This document shows, piece after piece, positions 35,837 through 64,000 of a DNA stretch of 64,000 nucleotides (within the stretch, counting starts at the first letter, position 1; the number at the start of each line of letters is the position of its first letter). Both the position numbers and the translations under genes were made by a program. The stretch is taken from the NCBI RefSeq assembly GCF_000315625.1, contig NW_005434612.1:1-64000 (forward strand). Direction: 5' to 3'. This DNA comes from Guillardia theta CCMP2712 (taxonomy: Eukaryota > Protista > Cryptophyta). The notes under the pieces are model-generated. The model ran no database searches and was not told the DNA's origin. It worked only from the letters and a program-made list of their open reading frames with translations.

Positions 35837-36256
35837 ATGCACAACTCTTCCACTGCGGCAACTCCCAAGAAGAACAGAGCCATCCGTAAGAACTGCATCA
35901 TCATCCATCCCTCCAAGCTCCAGACCCTCTTCTGCTACAAGGAGAGCGAGGCTGCTAAGATGCTCGGTATCTCTCTCACCGCCATGAAGAACGTATGCAG
36001 ACGCGCGGGTATCACGAAATGGCCCTACTCGAGGTCTCGACAAGCGACGACCCCGCCGCCAACCTCCCCGCCATCAGCATACGCTGCGGTTCTGACCTCC
36101 GCCATCCCAGAAGAGCACATCACCGACTGCGGGAGCAGCAGCGAGGGCCTGGACCCAACGGGAGCGCAAGAGGGAGAAGCGTGGGGCTGGGAGGAGGACG
36201 AGTGTCCGCTTGAGGCGGGGTGGATCGAGTGGTACATGAGGTCGGAAGAGGACTAG
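35837..36256 (+). CDS. RWP-RK domain transcription factor (small, intronless)
   Basis: LQTLFCYKESEAAKMLGISLTAMKNVCRRAGITKWPYSR matches the RWP-RK consensus (AAxxLGxxxTxLKxxCRxxGIxRWP). Confidence 0.88.
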   Translation: MHNSSTAATPKKNRAIRKNCIIIHPSKLQTLFCYKESEAAKMLGISLTAMKNVCRRAGITKWPYSRSRQATTPPPTSPPSAYAAVLTSAIPEEHITDCGSSSEGLDPTGAQEGEAWGWEEDECPLEAGWIEWYMRSEED

Positions 36257-38726: not shown

Positions 38727-40160
38727 ATGCTAACGTCTCAGTCGTGCAGACTCTCGGTGAGGGGGTAGCGAATCTTTCTACGGGATGTGATAATGTCGCA
38801 GGTGCAGAGGAAGCGAACGATGCTGCAGCAGTCGGCTGCCTCGGTCTCCCTTGGATCGCGTCCCCATTCGTCGAGCTGGTGACTTTATCGCTCTTGCCGC
38901 CTCTTCTCACCCGCCGCCCAGTGGCGGAGGGTCTGCAAGAGAAACTCCCCGAGGAACAAGGTGAAGCGGCACCTCCACGACGAAGTCACCTACAGGGAAA
39001 ACACGTTCCCCAAGGTCTCTTCCTCCTCCCCCCCGCCTTGCACTCATTCGCATGCGCAGGCCAAGCGATACTCCTCGGGCGACTGGATCCACATCCTCTT
39101 CACCTGGCCGCGTTCCACTGTCCTCCACAGGATCAGATCTCCAGTACTGGTGACCACCTGCTGGACGTTTCTCCTTGCCCTGCTGGACCTCTGGTCGGAC
39201 AAGGTAGCCAAAGTCAGGATCCTGAAGAACTTTAGCAAGAGTCCTCACTCCATCGTGGGATCCGCAATGTCCCTGCTCCTCGTCTTCCGCACTAACGCGG
39301 CCTACACGAGATTCTGGGAGGGAAGATGCTTGTGGGAGACGCTGACGAACAAGGCGAGGGACCTCACGAGAATGCTGGTGGCATACAGGCCCGTCATAGG
39401 AGAGAAGACGTGTGAGAGGATGGCGGACCTGATCTGTACCTTTCCTGTCGCCCTCAAGCATCACCTTGAGGGTTTCATGGGGCCTGACCAGGAGGAAGAG
39501 CTCGCACGCCTTCTCAACCCCCTCGATCGGCCTGGTGTGCTGCAAGCGGTCAACCGGCCCCTCTACATCGTGCAGGCCATGTCGTCCGTCATCACCAACG
39601 ACGTCCCTTACCAGTCTGACCGCTGGACCTCGAGGGAACGCCTGGCAGTGCTCGGCATGATTAACGAGCTCGGCAAGTGCGTCGGAGGCTGCGAGCGGAT
39701 CGTCCAGACGCCAATCCCGTTGCACTACGCGAGGCACACGGGCAGGTTCATGGGACTCTTCTGCCTCACCCTCCCTCTGGTCTTCATCGGGGAAATGGGC
39801 CTCCTTGCCGTCCCTGCCGTCGCCTGTGTAGTCTGGTGCCTCTACGGAGTTCAGGTCTTCCTCCTCCCGCCTCTCCTTCTCCCTCCTCTCCCTCCCTCCC
39901 TCCTCCTTGCGCTGAGATCATGAGCAGGAGATCGGTCTGCTCATCGAGAACCCCTTCTCTCGCTCCACCGAGGTGATGCCCTTGCTGCTGCCCAGCTCAA
40001 GTTGACGAGGCTACAGGGGACGTGGGCCCTCCCGCTGTCGGTCATCGCAGAATCGATCCGCTGTGACGTGTGGGAAGCGATGGATGCGGCACCGGCGCCG
40101 CTGACGATGCAGAATGAGAGTGACGCAGGGGAGGAGGGGGAGGCGACTGGAGGGAGGTGA
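38727..40160 (+). CDS. Bestrophin-like UPF0187 anion channel (VCCN/BST type)
   Basis: YSSGDW...PRSTVLHRI, PHSIVGSAMSLLLVFRTNAAYTRFWEGRCLW, GGCERIVQTPIPLHYARHTGRF, EIGLLIENPF. Confidence 0.92.
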
Positions 40161-40794
40161 GACAGTTTTTGATCAATCAAGGGGGAAGGAATGTGCTCCT
40201 GCTGGTTCCCCTCTGATCTAGCCCACGTCCTCCGCATGCAGACATGCGAGGAAAGATCTCAAGTCAGCACCAGATAGGAGACGAGAGTAAAGTACGATGT
40301 GGTAGGAGGAGACGTGGAAGTAGGAGTGGTCAGGGTCAAGCCTTCTCGGTGAGAGTAGGAGTAGTGGAAGTAGTGAAGTTGATGAAAATACTCGTTCATG
40401 AAGAATGTTGCAATAAAGATTCTTAAACCTCACTTGGTAAGTCTAAAGAACGACCACAACCACAGAGCTTCTAAAATGTGTAGAGAGAAATCATATACAA
40501 AAACATACAATCACCACTGAAAGAAATCAATAACGTAGGCATGCCTTGAATTTGTTCTCAAAGATACAGGCCTTGACCAACACCTTCCATGCGTCTTGAA
40601 TCCATGGAAATGCAACAGGAAGCTTAATCGACGGCATATTGACTTCCCATGACAAATATTACATCACATCCGCACAGCCATCACCAACTCGTGACCCCAT
40701 CCTTACTTGAGGTTCAACGTCACTGCAAGACTCGCCTCCCTCGTATCGTTTGCCTTTCCTTTCCTCTCATGGCCCTCAATTCTCCTCGCTGAAT

Positions 40795-43700
40795 TCAATG
40801 TCTACTCTCACGAAAGAGCTTGCGAGGCCTCAACTCGTCCTCCCCGTCTTCCTGTCGCTGCTGGCATGGCCGTCAGATCTCTCGACTATGACCTCCAGTC
40901 TCACCTCTTGATTTTTCACTCGCTTCCTCCTGGTCAAACGGGTGCTCTGACTATCCTCCTCCTCCTCAAGCTCCTGGCAGTTCTTGATGATCTCCTGCCA
41001 AAGGCACACTCGTGACTACGAGGTAGCAGGAGGTCAGGAGGCCTACCTTGAGCTCCTTGTCGATGGAGTCAAGCTCATCTCTCTGCCGTTGCAGCTCCTT
41101 ATATGCTTTGGCTCTCCAGTACTCGACGATGCCCATCCTTGCACACCTCACTTGCTTGTCCAGCAGCGTCTGGCTCCCGTCCCATGAAATGACCTTGTTC
41201 GGTCGGTCCAGTCCCACCACCATCTCGCCTCGAAGCATGGAGCGCGTGCGGTAGCGGATGGCATCATCCGACTGCTCGAAGACGACGAGCCTCCTGAAGA
41301 ATCGCTCGGCGAAGGAGAGCAGCTTCCTGTCTGTCTCTGCATCACGAGACTTGTTGAGGACGATGAAGCTGTCGGCTCGTCCCAGGGCCCCGCGAGACTC
41401 CTCGACGTCCTCGGGCAACCTGTCCTGCTCTACCAGGCAAGCGCTCTTGACTCGACACTTGGACTGACGGCAGATGCCGTCCATCTGCTCATCCAAGTCT
41501 CCATCGCTCTGAAAGATGACGGAGTTGAGGTCCTCGCCGAAAGCTGTCGACAAGGCCGTCTGAATGTCTGCTGCCCGAGGATGGTCGATGGAGAACAAGG
41601 AGGAAATACACCCTAAAGCGTCCTTGCAGCTCGCAGGAATCTTGACATCTGTGACCTCCGTCTTGTACTGAAGATCGTCATACTTGTTCTTGAAGTCCTT
41701 GAACCGCTCGGTCAGCTCTGCATTGTGATTCCTGATGCCTGTTTGAAACCTCTCACAGTCTCGCTTCAGCTTCCCCAAGTCCGAAGTTGCTGCGATATCG
41801 ACGTAGTAAGATTGGATAGCAGGAGAGACACCCTCTCGCTTGAGGAGCCTTGCAATAGCGTTCTCGATGTTTTGATGGCATATGGATGTTTGTACCTCGA
41901 CCCTGAGCTTCTCCTCTTCTTCTGTGTCGTCTTCGATAATCACCGGCTGTTCCTCGAAGGCGATGTTGGCTCTGCTCGCCTCCTGCACCTCCTCGTTCTC
42001 GTTGTCATTGATTGCAGTGTCATCGTGCACGCCAGCAGATGCAGCAGGAAGCGTCACGTTCATCGTTCGCTGATCCAACGACCTTATGGCAATGTTGCTC
42101 TGCACGTTAAACACAAGCGTACAAGCGCATAACTCCTGCTGCTCTTGTCTCTGAGGCACGAGCGTGAAGGTTCCTTTGACCGTGGGATGACGAGCGTTGA
42201 GGGTTACCGCATTGGTCTCTATCCGGACGAGATGGTCCTCCAGCACCCGTGCCACCACTGTAGCCTCCCACTCGCTCGTGGGATGATAGTTTGTCTTTCG
42301 AGACGCCCGGTCACATGCAGCGAGCGTGAAGCCACACTGAAGAGGGTCGTCAGTCGCAGGAGCATGAAGCTGCAAGTCCAGCTGCTCTACAGGTCCTGTA
42401 GCAATGGCGTGAGATACAAGCGGACAATCATGTCAAGCAGACAGTGTCTCTTACCTGACTTCACCTCCACGTTACAAGGCTTGGAAGCGATCGGAGGTCC
42501 TGCATACGAGGGTCTCGAGTCGACAAACTCAGCCGAGACCTGATGACTCCCGATCTCGCTGAGAGAGAAGGTGACGTGTACGCAGTTGCCGTCGAAGTTC
42601 TTGTACGACATGGGTATCATCTGCTTTTCACGGTACAGCCTCACATCCGGCATGGTACTCGTAGACCAGTCGTCGAGCTTTCTTTGGTCTTCGGTGTGGA
42701 GTTGGATCAAAGCTTCGAAGTCTGCTGCTGCAAGAGCTGAGCCTTGTGCGTACTCAAGATGTTTCTGTCGGTCTTTCACCGTCATCGCGATCTGAATGAC
42801 GGAGTTCCTAGCAGTTGCGATGACATTGAAGGTGAACATCTGTACTCGTTTTGACAAGATTTTAGGAAAATACTCTCCTGCTGGAAGGGCTGGAATTGTG
42901 CTGAGCTTGAAAGCATCCCCCCTTGACTCATCTGATACTTTCTCAAGCTCCCTGCTCTGTTTGCCTACCTGCAGCATCAGCGGCTGATCCCATGCAGCTG
43001 ACAAGTTGTTGTCCACACTGTCTGTAACGATGAACCTGATGTCACATTCGTACTCCGCCATGCTGGGGACTGAGAGGTTGACGAACGCTTGGCAGTCTGG
43101 CTGTACGCATATCTTGCACGGATCACCAGCTATCAGGTCCAAGTCCAGCTCGATGGGCTTCAAGTTGTAAGACTTTGTGCCACCTATACCTGTTTTCACG
43201 TTGAGCTTCAGCCCAAGCTTGAGAGTGCCCTTGGAGGGTTTACAGCGAATGAAAGCATTCCTTACAGTGATCTTAGAGCCTTTGATCGTGATGTTCCCAA
43301 GGGCATCTTTGCCTTCTACCACTTTGCGGTAGTTGTCATATAAAGTGACCGGAACCTCAAACCCATCTTCGCACGTGAAACTGAAGGCAAACTCATCATC
43401 CAAAGAAGGTTGGATGGGCGGGAAAACCACATATCCATCTCGATCCACTATGACTCCTTCCAACGTGAACAAGTCTCCTGCTTTGATATCAGAGATGCCT
43501 TGTGGTAGAGAAATCTTCAGCTTCTCAGGCTCTCCGGGGGTCACCAGGACATCAAGTTGGTACTGAAACAGTCGCGTCTCCTCTTTCTTCGTCTGCTTCG
43601 AGCCTGCACAGGAGAAGACCGAGATGGTCTGCTTGGAATTAGATCGTACGTACAACGGAGGCAGCGCAAAGACTTGATCCCGACCGGCTTCATAGACTGG

Positions 43701-46700
43701 CAGCTGTGCATTCATCCAGCTCATTTCTACTTTCAAGTTTGACCTGCCGTCCGCAAAGTGCTGGCAGGGCTGGTTTGTCTCGTCAGCAGCCACAAGGTAC
43801 AAGTCTGAGATCTTGTCGTTGTGCCGTGCGTTGAACGACACTGCTGCATTGTTGAGAGCCAACTCGACTCCTGATTGGAAGAGCTTCATGCGCCTCGGAG
43901 TTCCGCTCGGCTTCAGGGGACGTGAGAACCTCTGATGCAAGATCGTCGTCTCGGTCTCGTGGATGACATCTAAAGTCGCTTGAAGGCTCCGGGGAAACTC
44001 GTCGGAGTTGCAGAAGAACACATTGTCTGCCATCACATCAAGATCCAAAGTGTGCCTGAGGGAATCGTGAAACACAAGGCAACGACCCGAGATGTCTGAC
44101 AGCTTGACGAGATCACCGGCCACTGAATCCATTTGTAAAAGTAAGCGAGGATGATCACTGGTCTCCGAGAAATATTCAACCAAGATTCCAGTTTCATGTA
44201 CATGATTGAGAATAGACTTGACCCTTCCGAATTTTCTAACCTTCTGCCGCGATCGTCGGGAATCTCCTACTGAAATTTCTGCACCAGAATTCAAAATGAC
44301 ACAATCTCCTGTTTGGAAAAAGCCATGCTCCCTGTGAAATACCCCGACCGGTGCGCCTTGCTTGAGTATCATTTCTCTCCATCGACCCATGTCTGCTTCA
44401 CTAACTACCGTCTGAGCTGTTGCCGTATCATTCGAGAACAAAGAGCTCGCACACGAGCAGGTCAGGCGACATCTCCCTTTCCGTATCTTGTTTTCATCCG
44501 ACTGGCTATCGCCGTGAAGCAGGAGGTCCGGGCTCATCACCACGAGCTTGCCTTGGTTTCCGTCGCACATGTTTCCGCTCGCGTCTTGAATGCTGACGTC
44601 GACTGGCCCGAGCTGTTGGTAGTTGATATACTCCTCCCAGTCAGCGTCGCACTGTATACACGATGGCTGCCCATGCTGGACTTTGATCGAGATATTGTGC
44701 TCAACGACCTTCTGCTGATGAATGTCTGTGATGACTATGCGAGCAGGATACGTCCCGACGCCCCCATGAAGCACGCAGAGGTCTTGGATCCTGATGCTCC
44801 CAGCGTACTCAGGCGTGAAGGATAGCGAGACATCTAGAGCCCGAGCCTCGTCTACCAGAATGTCAAGCGTGTGGACGCCGAGTTGGAGATCGATGCTATT
44901 GTTGTATTTGTCGTGCACCTGTACTTCTAAGGAGGTCGTTTGCCCGAGCTCACATTGGATGATCGGAGTGTCTGGTCTGAGCGATACCTTGTGCATCTCT
45001 GCTGGGGTGATGTAGAACGTCGCGGGCTCGCACGTGAGCGGCGTCTGACCTGCAGCTGGCTCAAGGGATATCGTATACCGGCCTGCGACAGTCGCGAGCT
45101 TCTTCACTATCTTATCAGGATACGACAGATGCCCATTGGACACTTCGAAGCTTTCTGAGCAATCTTGTGACGCCACTGTGACCTTGAAGATCGGGATGTT
45201 TGTTTGAATGACTTCGTTGTTTGAGTTCTTGCAGACAACCCTTGTAAGCGGTAACATGCCAGCCTTCACGATGTGGTTGCGGAACTCGATAGCGACTGAT
45301 CTGACTATCTGCTTCTCATTCTTTGCTCTGGTAGCCTCGAACTCTTTGTTGCTGAGGGGCCTCATGGAGTAGTTTTGTATTCTGAAGCGATTATGCTTCG
45401 TCATGCTGTTGTCTGAAGCCAATAGAAGAAGCTCGACCTCCCCTGACGGCAAGTTCAAGTCAAAGTGCTTATCTTGCAAGAACCTCTCGATCCTTCCTAT
45501 ATGACTTTCAATCTTTGCTCTCTCCTTTGTTTCTTTGTACAGCTCGACAAATTCACCCACCTTATACTCATTGTCGCAGAATATGATCTTGTCGTGCTGA
45601 GACATTCCTTCAGCATCTATGTACTTTGGGTTTTCGTCTTCGAAGGAGACCTCTGCATCAAACTTGAGGTGACATTCTTTGAGCCAGAAATCGTATGCTT
45701 TTGCAAGGTCCTTCGAGTCAAGTGCATCTTGTAATTTTCTCATTTTGGTTTTGCCCATGTTGAATGACCATTTGCTTGCCTCTGGCTCGATCCCTCGGTC
45801 TACAAAGAGAATGCCGAAAGTCCTTGCATAGCATCGCTGCGGAGCAAGCGTCTTCTCTTCCTCACGGTATCTCATGAAGCCAGGAACATACTGCTCCCCT
45901 GGAAGCCATCGTCCCATCCAGAACACCATGAAGCGGCGATCCAACGAGGTTGAGTGCCCATGCAGCTCGTCAACGTACGGGACTGTGTCCTTGTTGCCCT
46001 GGTTCGGGAAATAGAATATCGCCCCCGTCGCGATCGAGCGCTTGGTGGGGTCTGCATGGTCGGGGATCTCGACGTAGATGGGGAAGCAGTCCTTGGCGTC
46101 GTCGCTCAGCACTCGGTCAAGGCAGCACGTCGAGTCTGCAAGTCGATGCGGAGGGGCCGAGCTAGCAGAGCCTTGATGGATCACCTCGAACTCCAGGTCA
46201 ATCTGCTCCGACATAGAGCCAGACTGGTCTCTACATTGCTTCAGCAACTTCTTCAAGCGGCTCATATCTTCATGAAACCTGTGTTCCCTCTGTGGTTTAC
46301 GACCCGTTCGCTTCCCATCTACAATCGGCTGATCTATCAGCCTCAGCACCTGGTCTACAAACCTCTTCGCGCCTGCCTGCTCTCCTTCAAGGTACATGTA
46401 GTACATCGCTCGGATGTTGCTCAGGCAGTGCCTGAGAGCTGCCGCAGAGAAAGCTCCATCGCTGGTAAAGAAATCAATCTTGAAGCCTTCTATGTCGATC
46501 TTGCAGAAGCTCGACGCGACGTCTTCGCCCTCCTGGAGAGACCTGATGCATCTAATTGCTTTCCAAGCCGATAAGGTTGAGTCTTCCACTACTTGCACAG
46601 TTCTGCTGTCTCGCGTCTTACTGCTCACAACATGTCTTGTCCCAAGGGCATTACAAGCATTTTTGGCCCCCACGCCATATCGAGAGAAGGTACCGCTCAG

Positions 46701-47437
46701 ATATCTCCTGAACGATGTGCAACCCTCGTCGTACAGCTCCTGCGTAGATGCTCGCTTTGACCCATACTGAAGCATTTCCTTGGGGTCTGAGCAGCCTATT
46801 CCATTGTCCACAAGATGAAAAGTGCCCCTTTGGAAGTTGAGTGTAACTCTGATAGTTTTGTTCTTGTCGTATTGGTTGCAGAGTACATGTTGTATCGAGT
46901 TATCAAAAAGCTCCCCGATCGCTGTCAAGAAAGAGTAATTACTGGTCGAACTTTCTAACATGCGCCCTTTATCAGGTGTGGTATCTTCCACTGTGACACA
47001 CTTGAAGGTAGAGAGGGTGTCTGCCAATGATCACATCAGTTCTTGACATGTCTCAGCTCCGGCATTCACCTTTAGCGGGCAGCAGCAGAAGTTTGTACGG
47101 TCCGGCATTGGAGTCAAACTGGAGCGAAGAGACTTCCATGAGGGTAATAGCATTGTAAAGCTTGAGGCCCTGGTACAGGACATGCTTGTCAGTTGAGATA
47201 GCGCATCATGGAAGGATGCGACACCTTGACCGACAGGTTGAGCTCGTCAGTCAAGTGCTTTACGAGGCTCTCTACGGCTTGGAAGGTGTTGATCTCTTGG
47301 ATGCTCAGGCGGGTGGGAGGTCTGGGGCCACGTGGTCAGGTAAATCAAACATCAGCATACTTCTGTTACCTTGCGGTTCCATCGGTGGTAGGAGGTAATA
47401 CTTTATCATCGATGTGTATCTCAACAGGCTCAGCCAT
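40795..47437 (-). CDS. SMCHD1/GMI1-like protein (GHKL ATPase - transducer - BAH-like - beta-rich linker with extra BAH - coiled coil - SMC hinge), about 2,100 aa, about 7 exons
   Basis: GHKL motifs AIGELFDNS, LVDNGIG, FSRYGVGAKNA, VVSSK; SMCHD1-like transducer words FMVFWMGRWLP, RCYARTFGILF, FWLKECHLKFDAEVSF; hinge-like ALGCISSLFSID...ALSTAFGEDLNSVI and LVVFEQSDDAIRYR; a short intron at about 42388-42454 joins the 1546-aa and 469-aa ORFs. Confidence 0.85.
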
Positions 47438-47711
47438 CTGTTGACGGTTCAGCTCTTTTTCCTCATCCTCTGTGTATTGATAGATGCGTTGATGAAAAGA
47501 AGGAGAAGCGCGAGCCGAGGGGGAAGGGAAGGTGGATAGGAATGAAGAATGTGAGGGGAGCGAGGGGAGGGAGAAGAGAGGAGAAGAATCCGCAAGCGGA
47601 AGGGAGGGAGAAGAATGGAAGGTTCCAGGATGAAGAAGTTTTTTGTGGCGGGCGGGAGGGAGGAAAGCTAAAAGTTGAGATAATGACAGTAGAGGGAGAA
47701 AGAAATGGAGA

Positions 47712-48021
47712 GAGGAGCGGGGAGGAGCGGGGAGGAGCGGGTAGGAGCGGGGAGGAGCGGGGAGGAGCAGGGAGGAGCGGGGAGGAGCGGGGAGGAGCGG
47801 GGAGGAGCAGGGAGGAGCGGGGAGGAGTAGGGAGGAGCGGGGAGGAGCGGGGAGGAGCAGGGAGGAGTGGGGAGGAGCGGGGAGGAGCGGGGAGGAGCGG
47901 GGAGGAGCGGGGAGGAGCGGGGAGGAGCGGGGAGGAGCGGGGAGGAGCGGGGAGGAGCGGGGAGGAGCGGGGAGGAGCGGGGAGGAGCGGGGAGGAGCGG
48001 GGAGGAGCGGGGAGGAGCGGG
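47712..48021. repeat. 10-bp G-rich tandem repeat (ggaggagcgg)n upstream of the SMCHD1-like gene
   Basis: About 30 units with occasional single-base variants. Confidence 0.92.
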
Positions 48022-48948
48022 GTAAGTGGAGCAGGCTCAGTGGGGAGAGAGGTGAGCTCGAGGGGGTTAAGAGAAGCAAGAAGGACTGAGCAGGCTCGCC
48101 TCAGAACTTTCTCCTATTTAACTAATAGTTAATCCTATTTGACTAATAATTTCTCCTATTCGCCCGTTACACGGACAGACCCACCTGCAGACCCACAAAC
48201 TGAGGTTGGACTGAGTGGGGACGAGGGGTCACTCCTTGCTGGGTTGTGGGGGGGATGAGGGACGAAAGTTGGAGGTCGGCATGGAAGTTGGCACCCAGTG
48301 TTGGTACCGGCCGCAGGTAACCCCCACCCCCTTCGAAATAACCCCCTGTCATAATTCTGCATGTGACCCCTATCTAAAAAGTTAAATTCATAGTACCCCC
48401 ATGGGTATTTTGGAGCATTCCCGTTGACTACCCCCGTCTATAACACCCCTACCCCCTATTCAAGAATTCGCAACAGAAACCGCCCAAGAATGTTGTCTTT
48501 CGCTCCCGCTGCTCTCGCATGCTTGCCATCGCGATCATAATTTCTCCTCTCCCTTGTCCTTTCTTCTCAGCCGACCCAATCTTTCCCGTCCTTGCATATC
48601 TGCTTCCTTGATCCTACTTCTCTACCTTCCCCAACGACTCGACTCGCCCTCATCCCTCAAATTTCAATCCCTTGCTACCAGCCCCCCAGTCTTGTCCATT
48701 GCTCGTCCTTGTACTTGTTTAACTCTTTATTTCTATTGCTAATCTCTCCTGTCCTCCCCCCTATCTGCCCTTGCATCTGTTGGAGAGCACTGAGCACTGA
48801 ACCTGCTCCACGAGCCTTATCCGGCATTTCCGTCCCCTGCTTTACCCTCAATCAACTCACAATTGTTGCCTCCTACTTTTCTTTCCCTGCCTCTTCACCT
48901 GATCCTCCTGTTGACAACTTGTTCCCCTCGGGCTGAAGTTTTGTTCAG

Positions 48949-50339: not shown

Positions 50340-50668
50340 AAACCCATGAAGGAGGCTGAGAGCTGGGTGTAGGGAGGAGTATGATCTTAAATTTTCCATT
50401 CGAATAAATAATTGTTTTGCTGTCAGTCGTCCTTGAATCCCCTTGGTGNNNNNNNNNNNNNNNNNNNNNNNNNNNNNNNNNNNNNNNNNNNNNNNNNNNN
50501 NNNNNNNNNNNNNNNNNNNNNNNNNNNNNNNNNNNNNNNNNNNNNNNNTTCGTCTCCTCTCTGGTATGCCTTCCCCCGTCCTTTCTTCCTCTCCACCTGA
50601 GTTTTTTCCGTCCCATCCTCCTCCTCCTCCACCTCCTCCTCCTCCTCCTCCTCCTCCTCCTCCTCCTG

Positions 50669-61604: not shown

Positions 61605-64000
61605 ATGGATCGCCAAATGACTCAAATTGATATCTTGTTTCCGACCATCGATAATGATGAATCTTGCAAAACCCTAAGGTAACAGAAGTATGCTGATGTT
61701 TGATTTATCTGACCACATGGCCCCAGACCTCCCACCCGCCTGAGCATCCAAGAGATCAACACCTTCCAAGACGTAGAGAGCCTCGTAAAGCACTTGACAG
61801 ACGAGCTCAACCTGTCGGTCAAGGTGTCGCATCCTTCCATGATGCGCTATCTCAACTGACAAGCATGTCCTGTACCAGGGCCTCAAGCTTTACAATGCTA
61901 TTACCCTCATGGAAGTCTCTTCGCTCCAGTTTGACTCCGATGCCGGACCGTACAAACTTCTGCTGCTGCCCGCTGAAGGTAAATGCCGGAGCTGAGACAT
62001 GTCAAGAACTGATGTGATCATTGGCAGACACCCTCTCTACCTTCAAGTGTGTCACAGTGGAAGATACCACACCTGATAAAGGGCGCATGTTAGAAAGTTC
62101 GATCAGTAATTACTCTTTCTTGACAGCGATCGGGGAGCTTTTTGATAACTCGATACAACATGTACTCTGCAACCAATATGACAAGAACAAAACTATCAAA
62201 GTTACACTCGACTTCCAAAGGGGCACTTTTCATCTTGTGGACAATGGAATAGGCTGCTCAGACCCCAAGGAAATGCTTCAGTATGGGTCAAAGCGCGCAT
62301 CTACGCAGGAGCTGTACGACGAGGGTTGCACATCGTTCAGGAGATATCTGAGCGGTACCTTCTCTCGATATGGCGTGGGGGCCAAAAATGCTTGTAATGC
62401 CCTTGGGACAAGACATGTTGTGAGCAGTAAGACGCGAGACAGCAGAACTGTGCAAGTAGTGGAAGACTCAACCTTATCGGCTTGGAAAGCAATTAGATGC
62501 ATCAGGTCTCTCCAGGAGGGCGAAGACGTCGCGTCGAGCTTCTGCAAGATCGACATAGAAGGCTTCAAGATTGATTTCTTTATCAGCGATGGAGCTTTCT
62601 CTGCGGCAGCTCTCAGGCACTGCCTGAGCAACATCCGAGCGATGTACTACATGTACCTTGAAGGAGAGCAGGCAGGCGCGAAGAGGTTTGTAGACCAGGT
62701 GCTGAGGCTGATAGATCAGCCAAATGCAGAGATGAGACGACGCGGACGGATCGCAAACGCAAAAAAATTTTATCAACACGACCTGAGCTGCTTGAGGACG
62801 ATGCTGAACAAATATCTTGTTGAGTCTGGCTCTATGTCGGAGCAGATTGACCTGGAGTTCGAGGTGATCCATCAAGACTCTGCTAGCTCGGCCCCTCCGC
62901 ATCGACTAGCAGACTCGATGTGCTGCCTTGACCGAGTGCTGAGCGACGACGCCAGGGACTGCTTCCCCATCTACGTCGAGATCCCCGACCATGCAGACCC
63001 CACCAAGCGCTCGATCGCTACGGGGGCGATATTCTACTTTCCGAACCAGGGCAACAAGGACACAGTCCCGTACGTTGACGAGCTGCATGGGCACTCAAGC
63101 TCATTGGATCGCCGCTTCATGGTGTTCTGGATGGGACGATGGCTTCCTGAAGAAGATTTCGTACCAGGTTTCATGAGATACCGTGAGGGGGATAAGCCGC
63201 TTGCCCCGCAGCGATGCTATGCAAGGACTTTCGGCATTCTTTTTGTAGACCGAGGGATCGAGCCAGAGGCAAACAAGCTGGCCCTGAGCAAGTCTGCTCC
63301 AAATGTAAAGAAGATGAAGGAGGCGATTGACTCGAAGGACCTTGCAAAAGCATATGATTACTGGCTCAAAGAATGTCACCTCAAGTTTGATGCAGAGGTC
63401 TCCTTCGAAGACGAAAACCCAAAGTACATAGATGCTGAAGGAATGTCTCAGCACGACAAGATCATATTCTGCGACAATGTGTATAAGGTGGGTGAATTCG
63501 TCGAGCTGTACAAAGAGTCAAAGGAGAAAGCAAAGATTGAAAGTCATATAGGAAGGATCGAGAGGTTCTTGCAAGATAAGCACTTTGACCTGCACTTGCC
63601 AACAGGGGAGGTCGAGCTTCTTCTATTGGCTTCAGACAACAGCATGACGAAGCATAATCGCTTCAGAATACAAAACTATTCCATGAGGCCCCTCAGCAAC
63701 AAAGAGTTCGAGGCTACCAGAGCAAAGAATGAGAAGCAGATAGTCAGATCAGTCGCTATCGAGTTCCGCAACCACATCGTGAAGGCTGGCATGTTACCGC
63801 TTACAAGGGTTGTCTGCAAGAACTCAAACAACGAAGTCATTCAGACAAACATCCCGATCTTCAAGGTCACAGTGGCGTCACAAGATTGCTTGGAAAGCTT
63901 CGAAGTGTCTAATGGGCTTCTGTCTTCTCCTGAAAAGATAGTGCCCAATGGGCATCTGTCTTTTCCTGACAAGATAGTGAAGAAGCTCGCGACTGTCGCA
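61605..64000 (+). CDS. Second SMCHD1/GMI1-like paralog (5' part; runs off the window end)
   Basis: 61677-64000 is a near-identical reverse complement of about 47372-45089, including three introns; no stop seen in the stretches I translated from about 62027; the first exon differs (MDRQMTQIDILFPTIDNDESCKTLR). Confidence 0.85.

What the first reader, a model, noticed from the sequence alone, without database searches (positions are those of the whole stretch)
40795..47437. Full-length SMCHD1/GMI1-like GHKL-ATPase/SMC-hinge protein in an algal (probably cryptophyte) genome
Seen: once short introns are removed, one gene of about 2,100 aa has a short N-terminal domain, all GHKL motifs (ELFDNS, DNGIG, SRYGVGAK), the transducer words FWMGRWLP / CYARTFGILF / WLKECHLKFD, about 1,000 aa of beta-rich linker, a coiled coil and a C-terminal hinge-like domain. 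Known: this GHKL+SMC-hinge architecture defines animal SMCHD1 (epigenetic silencing, X inactivation) and plant GMI1 (recombinational repair). Inference: a microbial eukaryote has an SMCHD1-type chromatin silencing or repair system, which would imply deep ancestry. The ORF track splits it into two anonymous proteins, so automated annotation could miss it.
Basis: partly seen in the sequence, partly recalled or inferred. Interest (0 to 1): 0.85.

Follow-up and report, generated by a model that had tools for sequence, protein, structure and literature searches.

The report
Full-length SMCHD1/GMI1 homologue in Guillardia
The alga Guillardia theta has an expressed gene of about 2,111 residues built like animal SMCHD1 and plant GMI1. 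The public annotation splits it into two truncated anonymous proteins, but the family and its old age in eukaryotes were already known.

Summary
On the minus strand, 47437-40795, seven exons separated by six GT..AG introns of 44-59 nt encode 2,111 aa. Transcript contigs from three runs skip introns 1-4 exactly, and these include the intron that joins the two large ORFs. The window is Guillardia theta CCMP2712 scaffold JH993026.1. There the gene is annotated as two hypothetical proteins of 611 and 576 aa; the first has the ATP-binding motifs spliced out, and 2.2 kb in the middle is unannotated.

Domain order:
- a beta-grasp (ubiquitin-like) N-terminal domain
- a GHKL ATPase with every catalytic motif
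- an SMCHD1-type S5 transducer (Pfam PF22899, 51 bits)
- a linker homologous to the animal SMCHD1 linker (hhalign 99%, E 4e-19)
- a coiled coil and an SMC-hinge fold (Z 12 to SMC hinges, 8.3 to the mouse SMCHD1 hinge)

An exhaustive profile search finds named SMCHD1 and GMI1 proteins, plus homologues in Naegleria, diplonemids, Amoebozoa, a malawimonad, a choanoflagellate and a glaucophyte.

Novelty is modest. Three full-length Guillardia paralogues already carry the automatic UniRef name "SMCHD1 ribosomal S5 d…" (cut short in the search output). Iyer et al. 2008 already called this fusion an ancient eukaryotic lineage. New here are the corrected gene model and the cryptophyte paralogue expansion.

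The parts
40795..47437 (-). Whole gene. Seven exons: 47437-47370, 47321-47225, 47169-47070, 47020-42455, 42395-41047, 40994-40905, 40860-40795 (stop TGA 40797-40795). The product has 2,111 aa. The introns are 48, 55, 49, 59, 52 and 44 nt, all GT..CAG.
   Evidence: assembly and translation, no internal stop. (introns 1-4 skipped in transcript contigs). (Guillardia paralogue P0003 aligns collinearly with model residues 94-2073).
47070..47437 (-). N-terminal domain of 88 aa on exons 1-3, with a beta-grasp (ubiquitin-like) fold.
   Evidence: AlphaFold2 model of P0020:1-88, which is identical to model aa 1-88: pLDDT 82.3. All 50 best Foldseek PDB matches are ubiquitin-like or beta-grasp domains, but they are weak (best E 0.011, TM 0.5-0.6). 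It shows no sequence similarity to the N-termini of non-cryptophyte relatives.
46584..46937 (-). Core of the GHKL (Bergerat) ATP-binding domain. N-box GELFDNS (Glu codon 46913-46911), G1 box DNGIG (46808-46794), G2 box SRYGVGAK (46685-46662).
   Evidence: Pfam HATPase_c_3 at 26.8 bits against a cut-off of 25. The motif residues D, N, D-G-G and G-G are invariant across animal SMCHD1, plant GMI1 and protist homologues.
45666..46103 (-). SMCHD1-type ribosomal-S5-fold transducer, with the conserved lysine at 45773-45771.
   Evidence: Pfam PF22899 SMCHD1_S5, E 2e-13, 51 bits against a cut-off of 27. phmmer against PDB finds only the SMCHD1 N-terminal module 6mw7 (E 7.5e-4). The lysine is invariant.
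42654..45521 (-). Beta-rich linker of about 950 aa, homologous along most of its length to the linker of animal SMCHD1.
   Evidence: hhalign of cryptophyte linkers against animal and choanoflagellate SMCHD1 linkers: probability 99.15%, E 3.9e-19, 739 aligned columns. Pfam finds no family in it.
43971..44444 (-). Insert of about 155 aa in the linker (GVFHREHGFFQTGDCV...) that has no counterpart in animal SMCHD1. Its fold was not determined.
   Evidence: In one search this stretch has no counterpart in the animal profile (no conserved columns are marked), while it is strongly conserved among the cryptophyte paralogues. Pfam and the Atlas gave nothing.
42055..42375 (-). Last Ig-like beta-sandwich of the linker.
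   Evidence: The AlphaFold2 model has strands over residues 1-107 of ORF2. VIA-align gives Z 6-8 to assorted beta-sandwich domains.
41671..41931 (-). Incoming coiled-coil helices, preceded by an acidic disordered stretch (42042-41935).
   Evidence: Helices 149-175 and 200-235 of ORF2; pLDDT is below 50 for residues 112-147.
41152..41619 (-). SMC-hinge domain.
   Evidence: Foldseek PDB: 55 matches at E<=0.001, and the 50 best listed are all SMC-type hinges (best 3.8e-7). VIA-align: T. maritima SMC hinge Z 12.3 (rmsd 3.3 A over 148 residues), Arabidopsis DMS3 Z 11.9, mouse SMCHD1 hinge 6n64 Z 8.3 (rmsd 4.6 A over 141). Pfam SMC_hinge scores only 17.6 bits, below its cut-off of 22.5. hhalign to the animal SMCHD1 C-terminus: 94.6%, E 7e-8.
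40795..41130 (-). Outgoing helix, then a basic tail (TRRKRVKNQE...RPRKLFRESRH) across introns 5 and 6. The tail may be a nuclear localisation signal; that is inference.
   Evidence: Helix 416-456. Tail alignment with the paralogues.
61725..64000 (+). Second, divergently oriented paralogue, cut off by the end of the window. It is not part of this gene but belongs to the same family.
   Evidence: tblastn: 86% amino-acid identity over 676 aa. blastn: 94.4% over 2,285 nt, introns included.

Best explanation
This is an expressed nuclear gene of Guillardia theta. It encodes a full-length member of the SMCHD1/GMI1 family, the non-canonical SMC proteins that carry a GHKL ATPase in place of a Walker ATPase. 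What is shown: the gene structure, transcription and splicing, and the domain order (beta-grasp domain, GHKL ATPase with all catalytic residues, SMCHD1-type S5 transducer, homologous beta-rich linker, coiled coil, SMC hinge). What is inferred from mouse and human SMCHD1: the protein dimerises through its C-terminal hinge, which also binds nucleic acid. ATP binding brings the two N-terminal GHKL-S5 modules together, and the N-terminal beta-grasp domain stabilises them. The dimer would then clamp or bridge chromatin and release on hydrolysis. The biological role is most likely heterochromatin or repeat silencing, DNA double-strand-break repair, or both. This protein has no signal peptide and has a basic tail, so it would act in the host nucleus and not in the nucleomorph compartment. 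Guillardia has at least five paralogues in three subfamilies shared with Hanusia, so the role may be divided among them.
For: Gene model and splicing. Organism and public annotation. GHKL and SMCHD1_S5. An exhaustive profile search gave 1,404 hits at E<=0.001, most of the best about 2,000 aa long; those I could name include SMCHD1 (animals), GMI1 (an angiosperm) and 'SMC hinge domain-containing protein' (Naegleria). Linker homology. Hinge fold and profile match. The hinge is detectable by Pfam in 32 of 74 C-termini of the family. Beta-grasp N-terminus. In the tree the cryptophyte clade (SH-aLRT 99) sits on the Cyanophora plus plant GMI1 side (92), opposite Holozoa, Amoebozoa, Discoba and the malawimonad (92). 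That split is the one expected if the gene was inherited vertically (inference from published eukaryote phylogenies). Mechanism of SMCHD1: PMC4628070 (hinge-mediated homodimer, ATPase), and PMC7458401 with PMC6620310 (UBL and ATP-dependent dimerisation).
Against: No functional data exist for any cryptophyte member. The hinge is very divergent in sequence: it falls below the Pfam cut-off, a cryptophyte hinge HMM does not find SMCHD1 or GMI1 hinges, and a profile search of PDB sequences found nothing significant. In the model the hinge is closer to canonical SMC and DMS3 hinges than to the mouse SMCHD1 hinge. The N-terminal fold matches are all weak (E >= 0.01). Only 4 raw reads were laid from the one true raw RNA-seq run, of which about 6% was read, so expression may be low. 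No MORC outgroup was in the tree, so the placement against MORC rests on Pfam and on the ranking of search hits. Introns 5 and 6 have no read support.
Confidence: 0.9

Rival explanations
1. There are two separate genes, as in the public annotation: a 611-aa S5-domain protein (47437-44834) and a 576-aa C-terminal protein (42611-40703), with non-coding DNA between them.
For: This is how GCA_000315625.1 is annotated. No single transcript contig spans the whole 6.6 kb.
Against: One uninterrupted ORF of 1,546 aa runs straight through the 'intergenic' 2.2 kb. That stretch is conserved and collinear with paralogues from Guillardia and with transcript-derived proteins from Hanusia, and it is homologous to the animal SMCHD1 linker. 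Transcript contigs lie inside the unannotated stretch, and one bridges intron 4. The public 611-aa model skips model residues 89-163 and 199-281, which hold the N-box, the DNGIG motif and the G2 box. No joint was reported there, and transcript contigs cross nearly all of the two skipped stretches uninterrupted. Those contigs differ from this copy by about 3%, so they may come from the paralogue.
Confidence: 0.03
2. It is a MORC or paraMORC-type GHKL ATPase that gained a hinge-like C-terminus independently. On this view it is an analogue of SMCHD1/GMI1 and not an orthologue.
For: HATPase_c_3 is shared by MORC, MutL and SMCHD1. The hinge shows little sequence similarity to SMCHD1 and GMI1 hinges. 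My tree has no MORC outgroup.
Against: The S5 domain matches the SMCHD1-specific Pfam model at 51 bits, and no MORC S5 family appears at E<=0.1. The roughly 950-aa linker, which MORCs lack, is homologous to the animal SMCHD1 linker at E 3.9e-19. The C-terminus matches the animal SMCHD1 C-terminus at 94.6%. Total length and domain order are the same as in named SMCHD1 and GMI1 proteins.
Confidence: 0.04
3. It is a decaying or catalytically dead paralogue, one redundant copy of an expanded family with no ATPase function of its own.
For: There are at least five paralogues in the genome, and a near-identical neighbour lies 14 kb away. Raw-read coverage is low.
Against: The 6.3-kb reading frame is intact with no stop. 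Every family-invariant GHKL and S5 residue is kept. Splicing is correct in three independent runs. Hanusia has co-orthologues, so the copy predates the split of the two genera.
Confidence: 0.03

Closest known systems
Animal SMCHD1 (structural maintenance of chromosomes flexible hinge domain-containing protein 1; structures 6mw7 and 6n64)
   Same: About 2,000 aa. Same domain order: N-terminal beta-grasp domain, GHKL ATPase, SMCHD1-type S5 transducer, long beta-rich linker, short coiled coil, C-terminal SMC hinge. All catalytic residues are shared. Linker and C-terminus are homologous at profile level.
   Different: Only about 21-22% identity in the ATPase module. The N-terminal domain has no detectable sequence similarity. 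A 155-aa insert in the linker is absent from animals. The modelled hinge resembles canonical SMC hinges (Z about 12) more than the mouse SMCHD1 hinge (Z 8.3). None of the known partners or targets of animal SMCHD1 was looked for in Guillardia.
[quoted passage not shown]
   Same: GHKL, SMCHD1-type S5 and C-terminal hinge. In the tree, plant GMI1 and the glaucophyte homologue are on the same side as the cryptophyte clade (SH-aLRT 92).
   Different: The angiosperm proteins are shorter (about 1,500-1,650 aa). The catalytic Glu position reads Asp in the two plant sequences aligned. The C-terminal profile match is weak (64.9%, E 6e-5).
Guillardia theta paralogues GUITHDRAFT_121490, _141368 and _141135, and the Hanusia phi transcripts
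   Same: Same architecture, 30-42% identity over the whole length, collinear. All are cryptophyte and form one clade.
   Different: Those three Guillardia genes are annotated full length. This one is split and truncated in the public record.
MORC ATPases and Arabidopsis DMS3
   Same: MORCs share the GHKL+S5 module. DMS3 shares the hinge fold (Z 11.9).
   Different: MORCs lack the long linker and the hinge (established knowledge; PMC5651269), and no MORC S5 family matched at E<=0.1. DMS3 lacks the ATPase (PMC5651269).

Membership tests
SMCHD1/GMI1 family | GHKL (Bergerat-fold) ATPase with N-box Glu/Asn, DxGxG and the G2-box glycines | tested here: met
   HATPase_c_3 scores above its cut-off. 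The motif residues are invariant in an alignment with named SMCHD1 and GMI1 proteins. Enzymatic activity was not tested.
SMCHD1/GMI1 family | SMCHD1-type S5-fold transducer with the conserved lysine, directly after the GHKL domain | tested here: met
   PF22899 at 51 bits against a cut-off of 27. 6mw7 is the only PDB sequence hit. The lysine is invariant.
SMCHD1/GMI1 family | C-terminal SMC-hinge domain flanked by short coiled coils | tested here: met
   Fold: (Z 12 to SMC hinges, 8.3 to 6n64). Profile match to the animal SMCHD1 C-terminus at 94.6%. By sequence alone it falls below the Pfam cut-off (17.6 against 22.5 bits).
SMCHD1/GMI1 family | Long beta-rich linker between ATPase module and hinge, homologous across the family | tested here: met
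   hhalign 99.15%, E 3.9e-19, 739 columns against animal SMCHD1 linkers.
SMCHD1/GMI1 family | N-terminal ubiquitin-like domain before the ATPase (described for human SMCHD1, PMC6620310) | tested here: inconclusive
   The model is confident (pLDDT 82.3) and all 50 best fold matches are beta-grasp or ubiquitin-like, but at E 0.01-0.09. There is no sequence similarity to other lineages' N-termini. 73 relatives have an N-terminal extension of 70-150 aa in the same place.
SMCHD1/GMI1 family | Groups with SMCHD1/GMI1 and not with MORC in a phylogeny of the ATPase module | tested here: inconclusive
   In the tree the cryptophytes lie among SMCHD1 and GMI1 homologues from six eukaryotic groups, but no MORC sequences were available as an outgroup. 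Pfam and the hit ranking favour SMCHD1.
SMCHD1/GMI1 family | Hinge-mediated homodimerisation, nucleic-acid binding, ATP hydrolysis | not testable with these tools
   These are biochemical properties shown for mouse and human SMCHD1 (PMC4628070).
MORC family | GHKL plus MORC-type S5, usually with CW or coiled-coil C-terminus, 600-1,000 aa | tested here: not met
   No MORC S5 Pfam hit at E<=0.1. The protein has 2,111 aa with a hinge.

The most novel reading that the evidence does not exclude
Cryptophytes have turned the usually single-copy SMCHD1 into a multi-paralogue system. Guillardia has at least five genes in three subfamilies that predate the Guillardia/Hanusia split, one head-to-head pair is being homogenised, and there is a lineage-specific 155-aa linker insert. 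The paralogues may pair through their hinges as heterodimers, in the way canonical eukaryotic SMCs do, and divide chromatin tasks between them. That would make this the first non-canonical SMC family seen to make the step from homodimer to heterodimer.
Probability: 0.15. Interest if true: 0.6.

Novelty: new member of a known kind. Interest (0 to 1): 0.4.

Why it matters
It corrects a public gene model. The deposited Guillardia annotation cuts this gene in two and removes its ATP-binding motifs, so searches by domain architecture miss it.

My side survey found the full GHKL-S5-linker-hinge design in Cryptista, Archaeplastida, Discoba, Amoebozoa, a malawimonad and Holozoa. That gives concrete support to the 2008 suggestion that this fusion is an ancient eukaryotic lineage.

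If a way to manipulate cryptophyte genes becomes available, an alga could be used to ask what SMCHD1-type proteins did before X inactivation or plant-type repair existed. This adds to existing knowledge and does not overturn any of it.

Tried and rejected
- A profile of the cryptophyte C-termini against PDB sequences gave nothing significant, and phmmer with ORF2 alone gave only noise.
- A cryptophyte hinge HMM did not find the hinges of named SMCHD1 or GMI1 proteins.
- The word-indexed homologue search with a full-length alignment reached only cryptophytes and a few repetitive bacterial proteins, whose matches I treat as repeat or compositional similarity.
- Pfam found no family in the linker of this protein, of an animal SMCHD1 or of GMI1.
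- The Atlas gave no lead for the linker insert.
- A 74-sequence alignment of N-terminal extensions was too poor to use (9% column identity), so the N-terminal domain was folded with five cryptophyte sequences only.
- The public end at 40703 lies in a different frame from both.
- Six literature searches for SMCHD1 in protists found no paper that links them. The GMI1 paper (Bohmdorfer 2011) is not held.
Full report
**What is in the sequence.** The feature lies on the minus strand. Between them is a 59-nt GT..AG intron (42454-42396) whose removal keeps the frame, giving ...VEVKS-G-PVEQLDLQ.... Upstream, three short exons (47437-47370, 47321-47225, 47169-47070) add 88 residues. Downstream, a 52-nt intron (41046-40995) and a 44-nt intron (40904-40861) lead to a stop at 40797-40795. 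I first read through the last intron to a stop at 40830. The final model has seven exons, introns of 48, 55, 49, 59, 52 and 44 nt that all end in CAG, and 2,111 aa.

**Transcript evidence.** Contigs of three runs listed as probable RNA skip exactly introns 1-4. The 59-nt intron that joins the two ORFs is skipped in all three runs, and one contig of run X3 has 559 and 413 nt on its two sides with under 1% differences. Genomic DNA would not lack these stretches, so these are spliced transcripts. Introns 5 and 6 lay outside the 6,000 bases I was allowed to lay and are not confirmed by reads. From the one true raw RNA-seq run, 4 reads were laid after about 6% of it was read. That says little either way about expression level.

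**Organism and public annotation.** A neighbouring ORF is found letter for letter in JGI, UniRef and MMETSP records. A database fragment, P0020, is 99.4% identical to part of my model. Its genomic record is GCA_000315625.1, Guillardia theta CCMP2712, scaffold JH993026.1, and positions 34834-57437 of that scaffold match the same window coordinates at 100%. In the public annotation the locus holds two genes: a 611-aa product over 47437-44834 and a 576-aa product over 42611-40703, with nothing annotated between them. The 611-aa model uses my exons 1-3 but then skips model residues 89-163 and 199-281. These are the stretches that hold the N-box, DNGIG and the G2 box. That explains why its precomputed Pfam hit is SMCHD1_S5 alone. 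Transcript contigs run through nearly all of those two 'introns' without a joint. They differ from this copy by about 3% and may come from the paralogue described below.

**N-terminal ATPase module.** Pfam gives SMCHD1_S5 (PF22899) at E 2e-13 and 51 bits against a cut-off of 27. It gives HATPase_c_3 just above its cut-off, and no MORC S5 family at E<=0.1. The only PDB sequence hit is the SMCHD1 N-terminal module 6mw7. I aligned the module with proteins that their sources name SMCHD1 (animals) and GMI1 (an angiosperm), and with homologues from Naegleria, Diplonema, a dictyostelid, a malawimonad, a liverwort and Cyanophora. The invariant columns are the Asp-Asn of the N-box, D-G-G of DxGxG, the two G2-box glycines and the S5 lysine. 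The catalytic Glu is present here (GELFDNS).

**N-terminal 88 residues.** Folded with four cryptophyte homologues, they give a confident model (pLDDT 82.3) with a strand-strand-helix-strand-strand order. All 50 best Foldseek matches are ubiquitin-like or beta-grasp domains (CIDE-N, SUMO, UBL, UBX, Ras-binding), but none is better than E 0.011. This fits the UBL described for human SMCHD1 (PMC6620310). I rate it as likely, not proven. There is no sequence similarity to the N-termini of other lineages, although 73 relatives have an extension of 70-150 aa in the same position.

**Linker.** Pfam finds nothing in it, nor in the linkers of an animal SMCHD1 or of GMI1. A profile of seven cryptophyte linkers matches a profile of ten animal and choanoflagellate SMCHD1 linkers at 99.15% probability, E 3.9e-19, over 739 columns. 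So the proteins are homologous along their length and not only at the ends. The match breaks over about 155 cryptophyte residues (window 44444-43971) that have no animal counterpart but are strongly conserved among the paralogues. This is the stretch that another first-stage note calls BAH-like. I did not determine its fold.

**C-terminus.** Pfam SMC_hinge scores 17.6 bits, below its cut-off, and profile searches of PDB sequences are empty. The AlphaFold2 model (pLDDT 70.8 overall, about 80-89 in the domain) shows, in order, a last Ig-like sandwich, an acidic disordered stretch, two long helices, an alpha/beta domain over residues 253-408 of ORF2, and a returning helix. Foldseek finds 55 matches at E<=0.001, and the 50 best listed are all hinges of SMC-type proteins or DMS3. 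VIA-align gives Z 12.3 (rmsd 3.3 A over 148 residues) to the T. maritima SMC hinge, 11.9 to DMS3 and 8.3 (rmsd 4.6 A over 141) to the mouse SMCHD1 hinge. Profile against profile, the cryptophyte C-terminus matches the animal SMCHD1 C-terminus at 94.6% (E 7e-8) and plant GMI1 at 64.9%.

**Family and distribution.**
- An exhaustive HMMER search with the ATPase-module profile found 1,404 proteins at E<=0.001 and 64 at E<=1e-30, most of the best about 2,000 aa long.
- Twenty were looked up by exact sequence. They include SMCHD1 and SMCHD1-like proteins of animals, GMI1 of Tasmannia, and proteins of Riccia, Cyanophora, Naegleria ('SMC hinge domain-containing protein'), Diplonema and another diplonemid, Protostelium, Synstelium, the choanoflagellate Didymoeca and the malawimonad Gefionella.
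- 32 of 74 C-termini of the family hit Pfam SMC_hinge.
- In an IQ-TREE tree of 81 modules the cryptophyte proteins form one clade (SH-aLRT 99). It has three subfamilies, each containing Hanusia, and two of them an annotated Guillardia protein; this gene groups with two Hanusia transcripts (92).
- The clade sits with Cyanophora and plant GMI1 (92), opposite Discoba, Amoebozoa, the malawimonad and Holozoa (92). This split is what I would expect from vertical inheritance, judged against published eukaryote phylogenies (inference). The tree is unrooted and has no MORC outgroup.

**Likely mechanism.** By analogy with mouse and human SMCHD1 (PMC4628070, PMC7458401), the protein should dimerise through the hinge, bind nucleic acid there, and close its two GHKL-S5 heads on ATP. 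It would act as a clamp or bridge on chromatin. It has no signal peptide and ends in a basic tail, so I expect it in the host nucleus. Silencing, repair or both remain open, and nothing here tests function.

**Novelty.** Three full-length Guillardia paralogues are already in NCBI as hypothetical proteins, and UniRef names them automatically; the search output cuts the name short at 'SMCHD1 ribosomal S5 d'. [quoted passage not shown] Six searches found no paper that links SMCHD1 to cryptophytes or other protists. New here are:
- the corrected gene model;
- the homology of the linker;
- the cryptophyte expansion to at least five genes, including a head-to-head pair in this window;
- a named list of protist lineages that hold the family.

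I class it as a new member of a known kind, with an interest score of 0.4.

**Limits.** Read evidence covers 41451-47450 only. Names are known for 20 of the 150 listed hits.

Noticed in passing
window 61725-64000 (+): A second SMCHD1-like gene faces away from this one, about 14 kb off, and is cut by the end of the window. It is 86% identical in protein and 94.4% in DNA over 2,285 nt, introns included. That suggests a recent duplication or gene conversion.
   Followed up: partly
window 43971-44444 (-): A stretch of about 155 aa inside the linker (GVFHREHGFFQTGDCV...GRVKSI...) is conserved in all cryptophyte paralogues but has no counterpart in animal SMCHD1. Its fold is unknown. Another first-stage note calls it BAH-like.
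   Followed up: partly
window 45400-45560 (-), just after the S5 domain: The segment ...YKVGEFVELYKE...HIGRIERFLQD... aligns with ...GTIxRFLLxG... at the start of the animal SMCHD1 linker, in roughly the position where others reported a weak BAH-like region in SMCHD1 (PMC4628070).
   Followed up: partly
window 47540-48080: A tandem repeat lies upstream of the start codon. In one frame it reads (SSPLLPAPPR)n and on the other strand (GEERGGAGRS)n. It lies in the likely promoter or 5' UTR region, and nothing here suggests that it codes for protein.
   Followed up: no
window 50449-50548: A run of 100 N, an assembly gap, lies between the two paralogues in the public scaffold.
   Followed up: no
window 38961-39923 (+): The neighbouring gene downstream is annotated with Pfam Bestrophin_2. 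A further neighbour (L001 21182-21601, about window 35837-36256) carries RWP-RK.
   Followed up: no
loci of P0001-P0007 and P0019 (Hanusia phi and Guillardia theta proteins): The cryptophyte SMCHD1-like proteins fall into three subfamilies that each contain Hanusia (two also an annotated Guillardia protein), so the expansion predates the split of these genera. Two environmental proteins (P0008, P0021) are the sister group.
   Followed up: partly
Read-laying table 7, window 46958: Contigs of runs X1 and X2 match up to 46958 and then continue with unrelated letters, with about 3% differences along the matched part. They are probably transcripts of the paralogue or a chimeric assembly of the two copies.
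   Followed up: no
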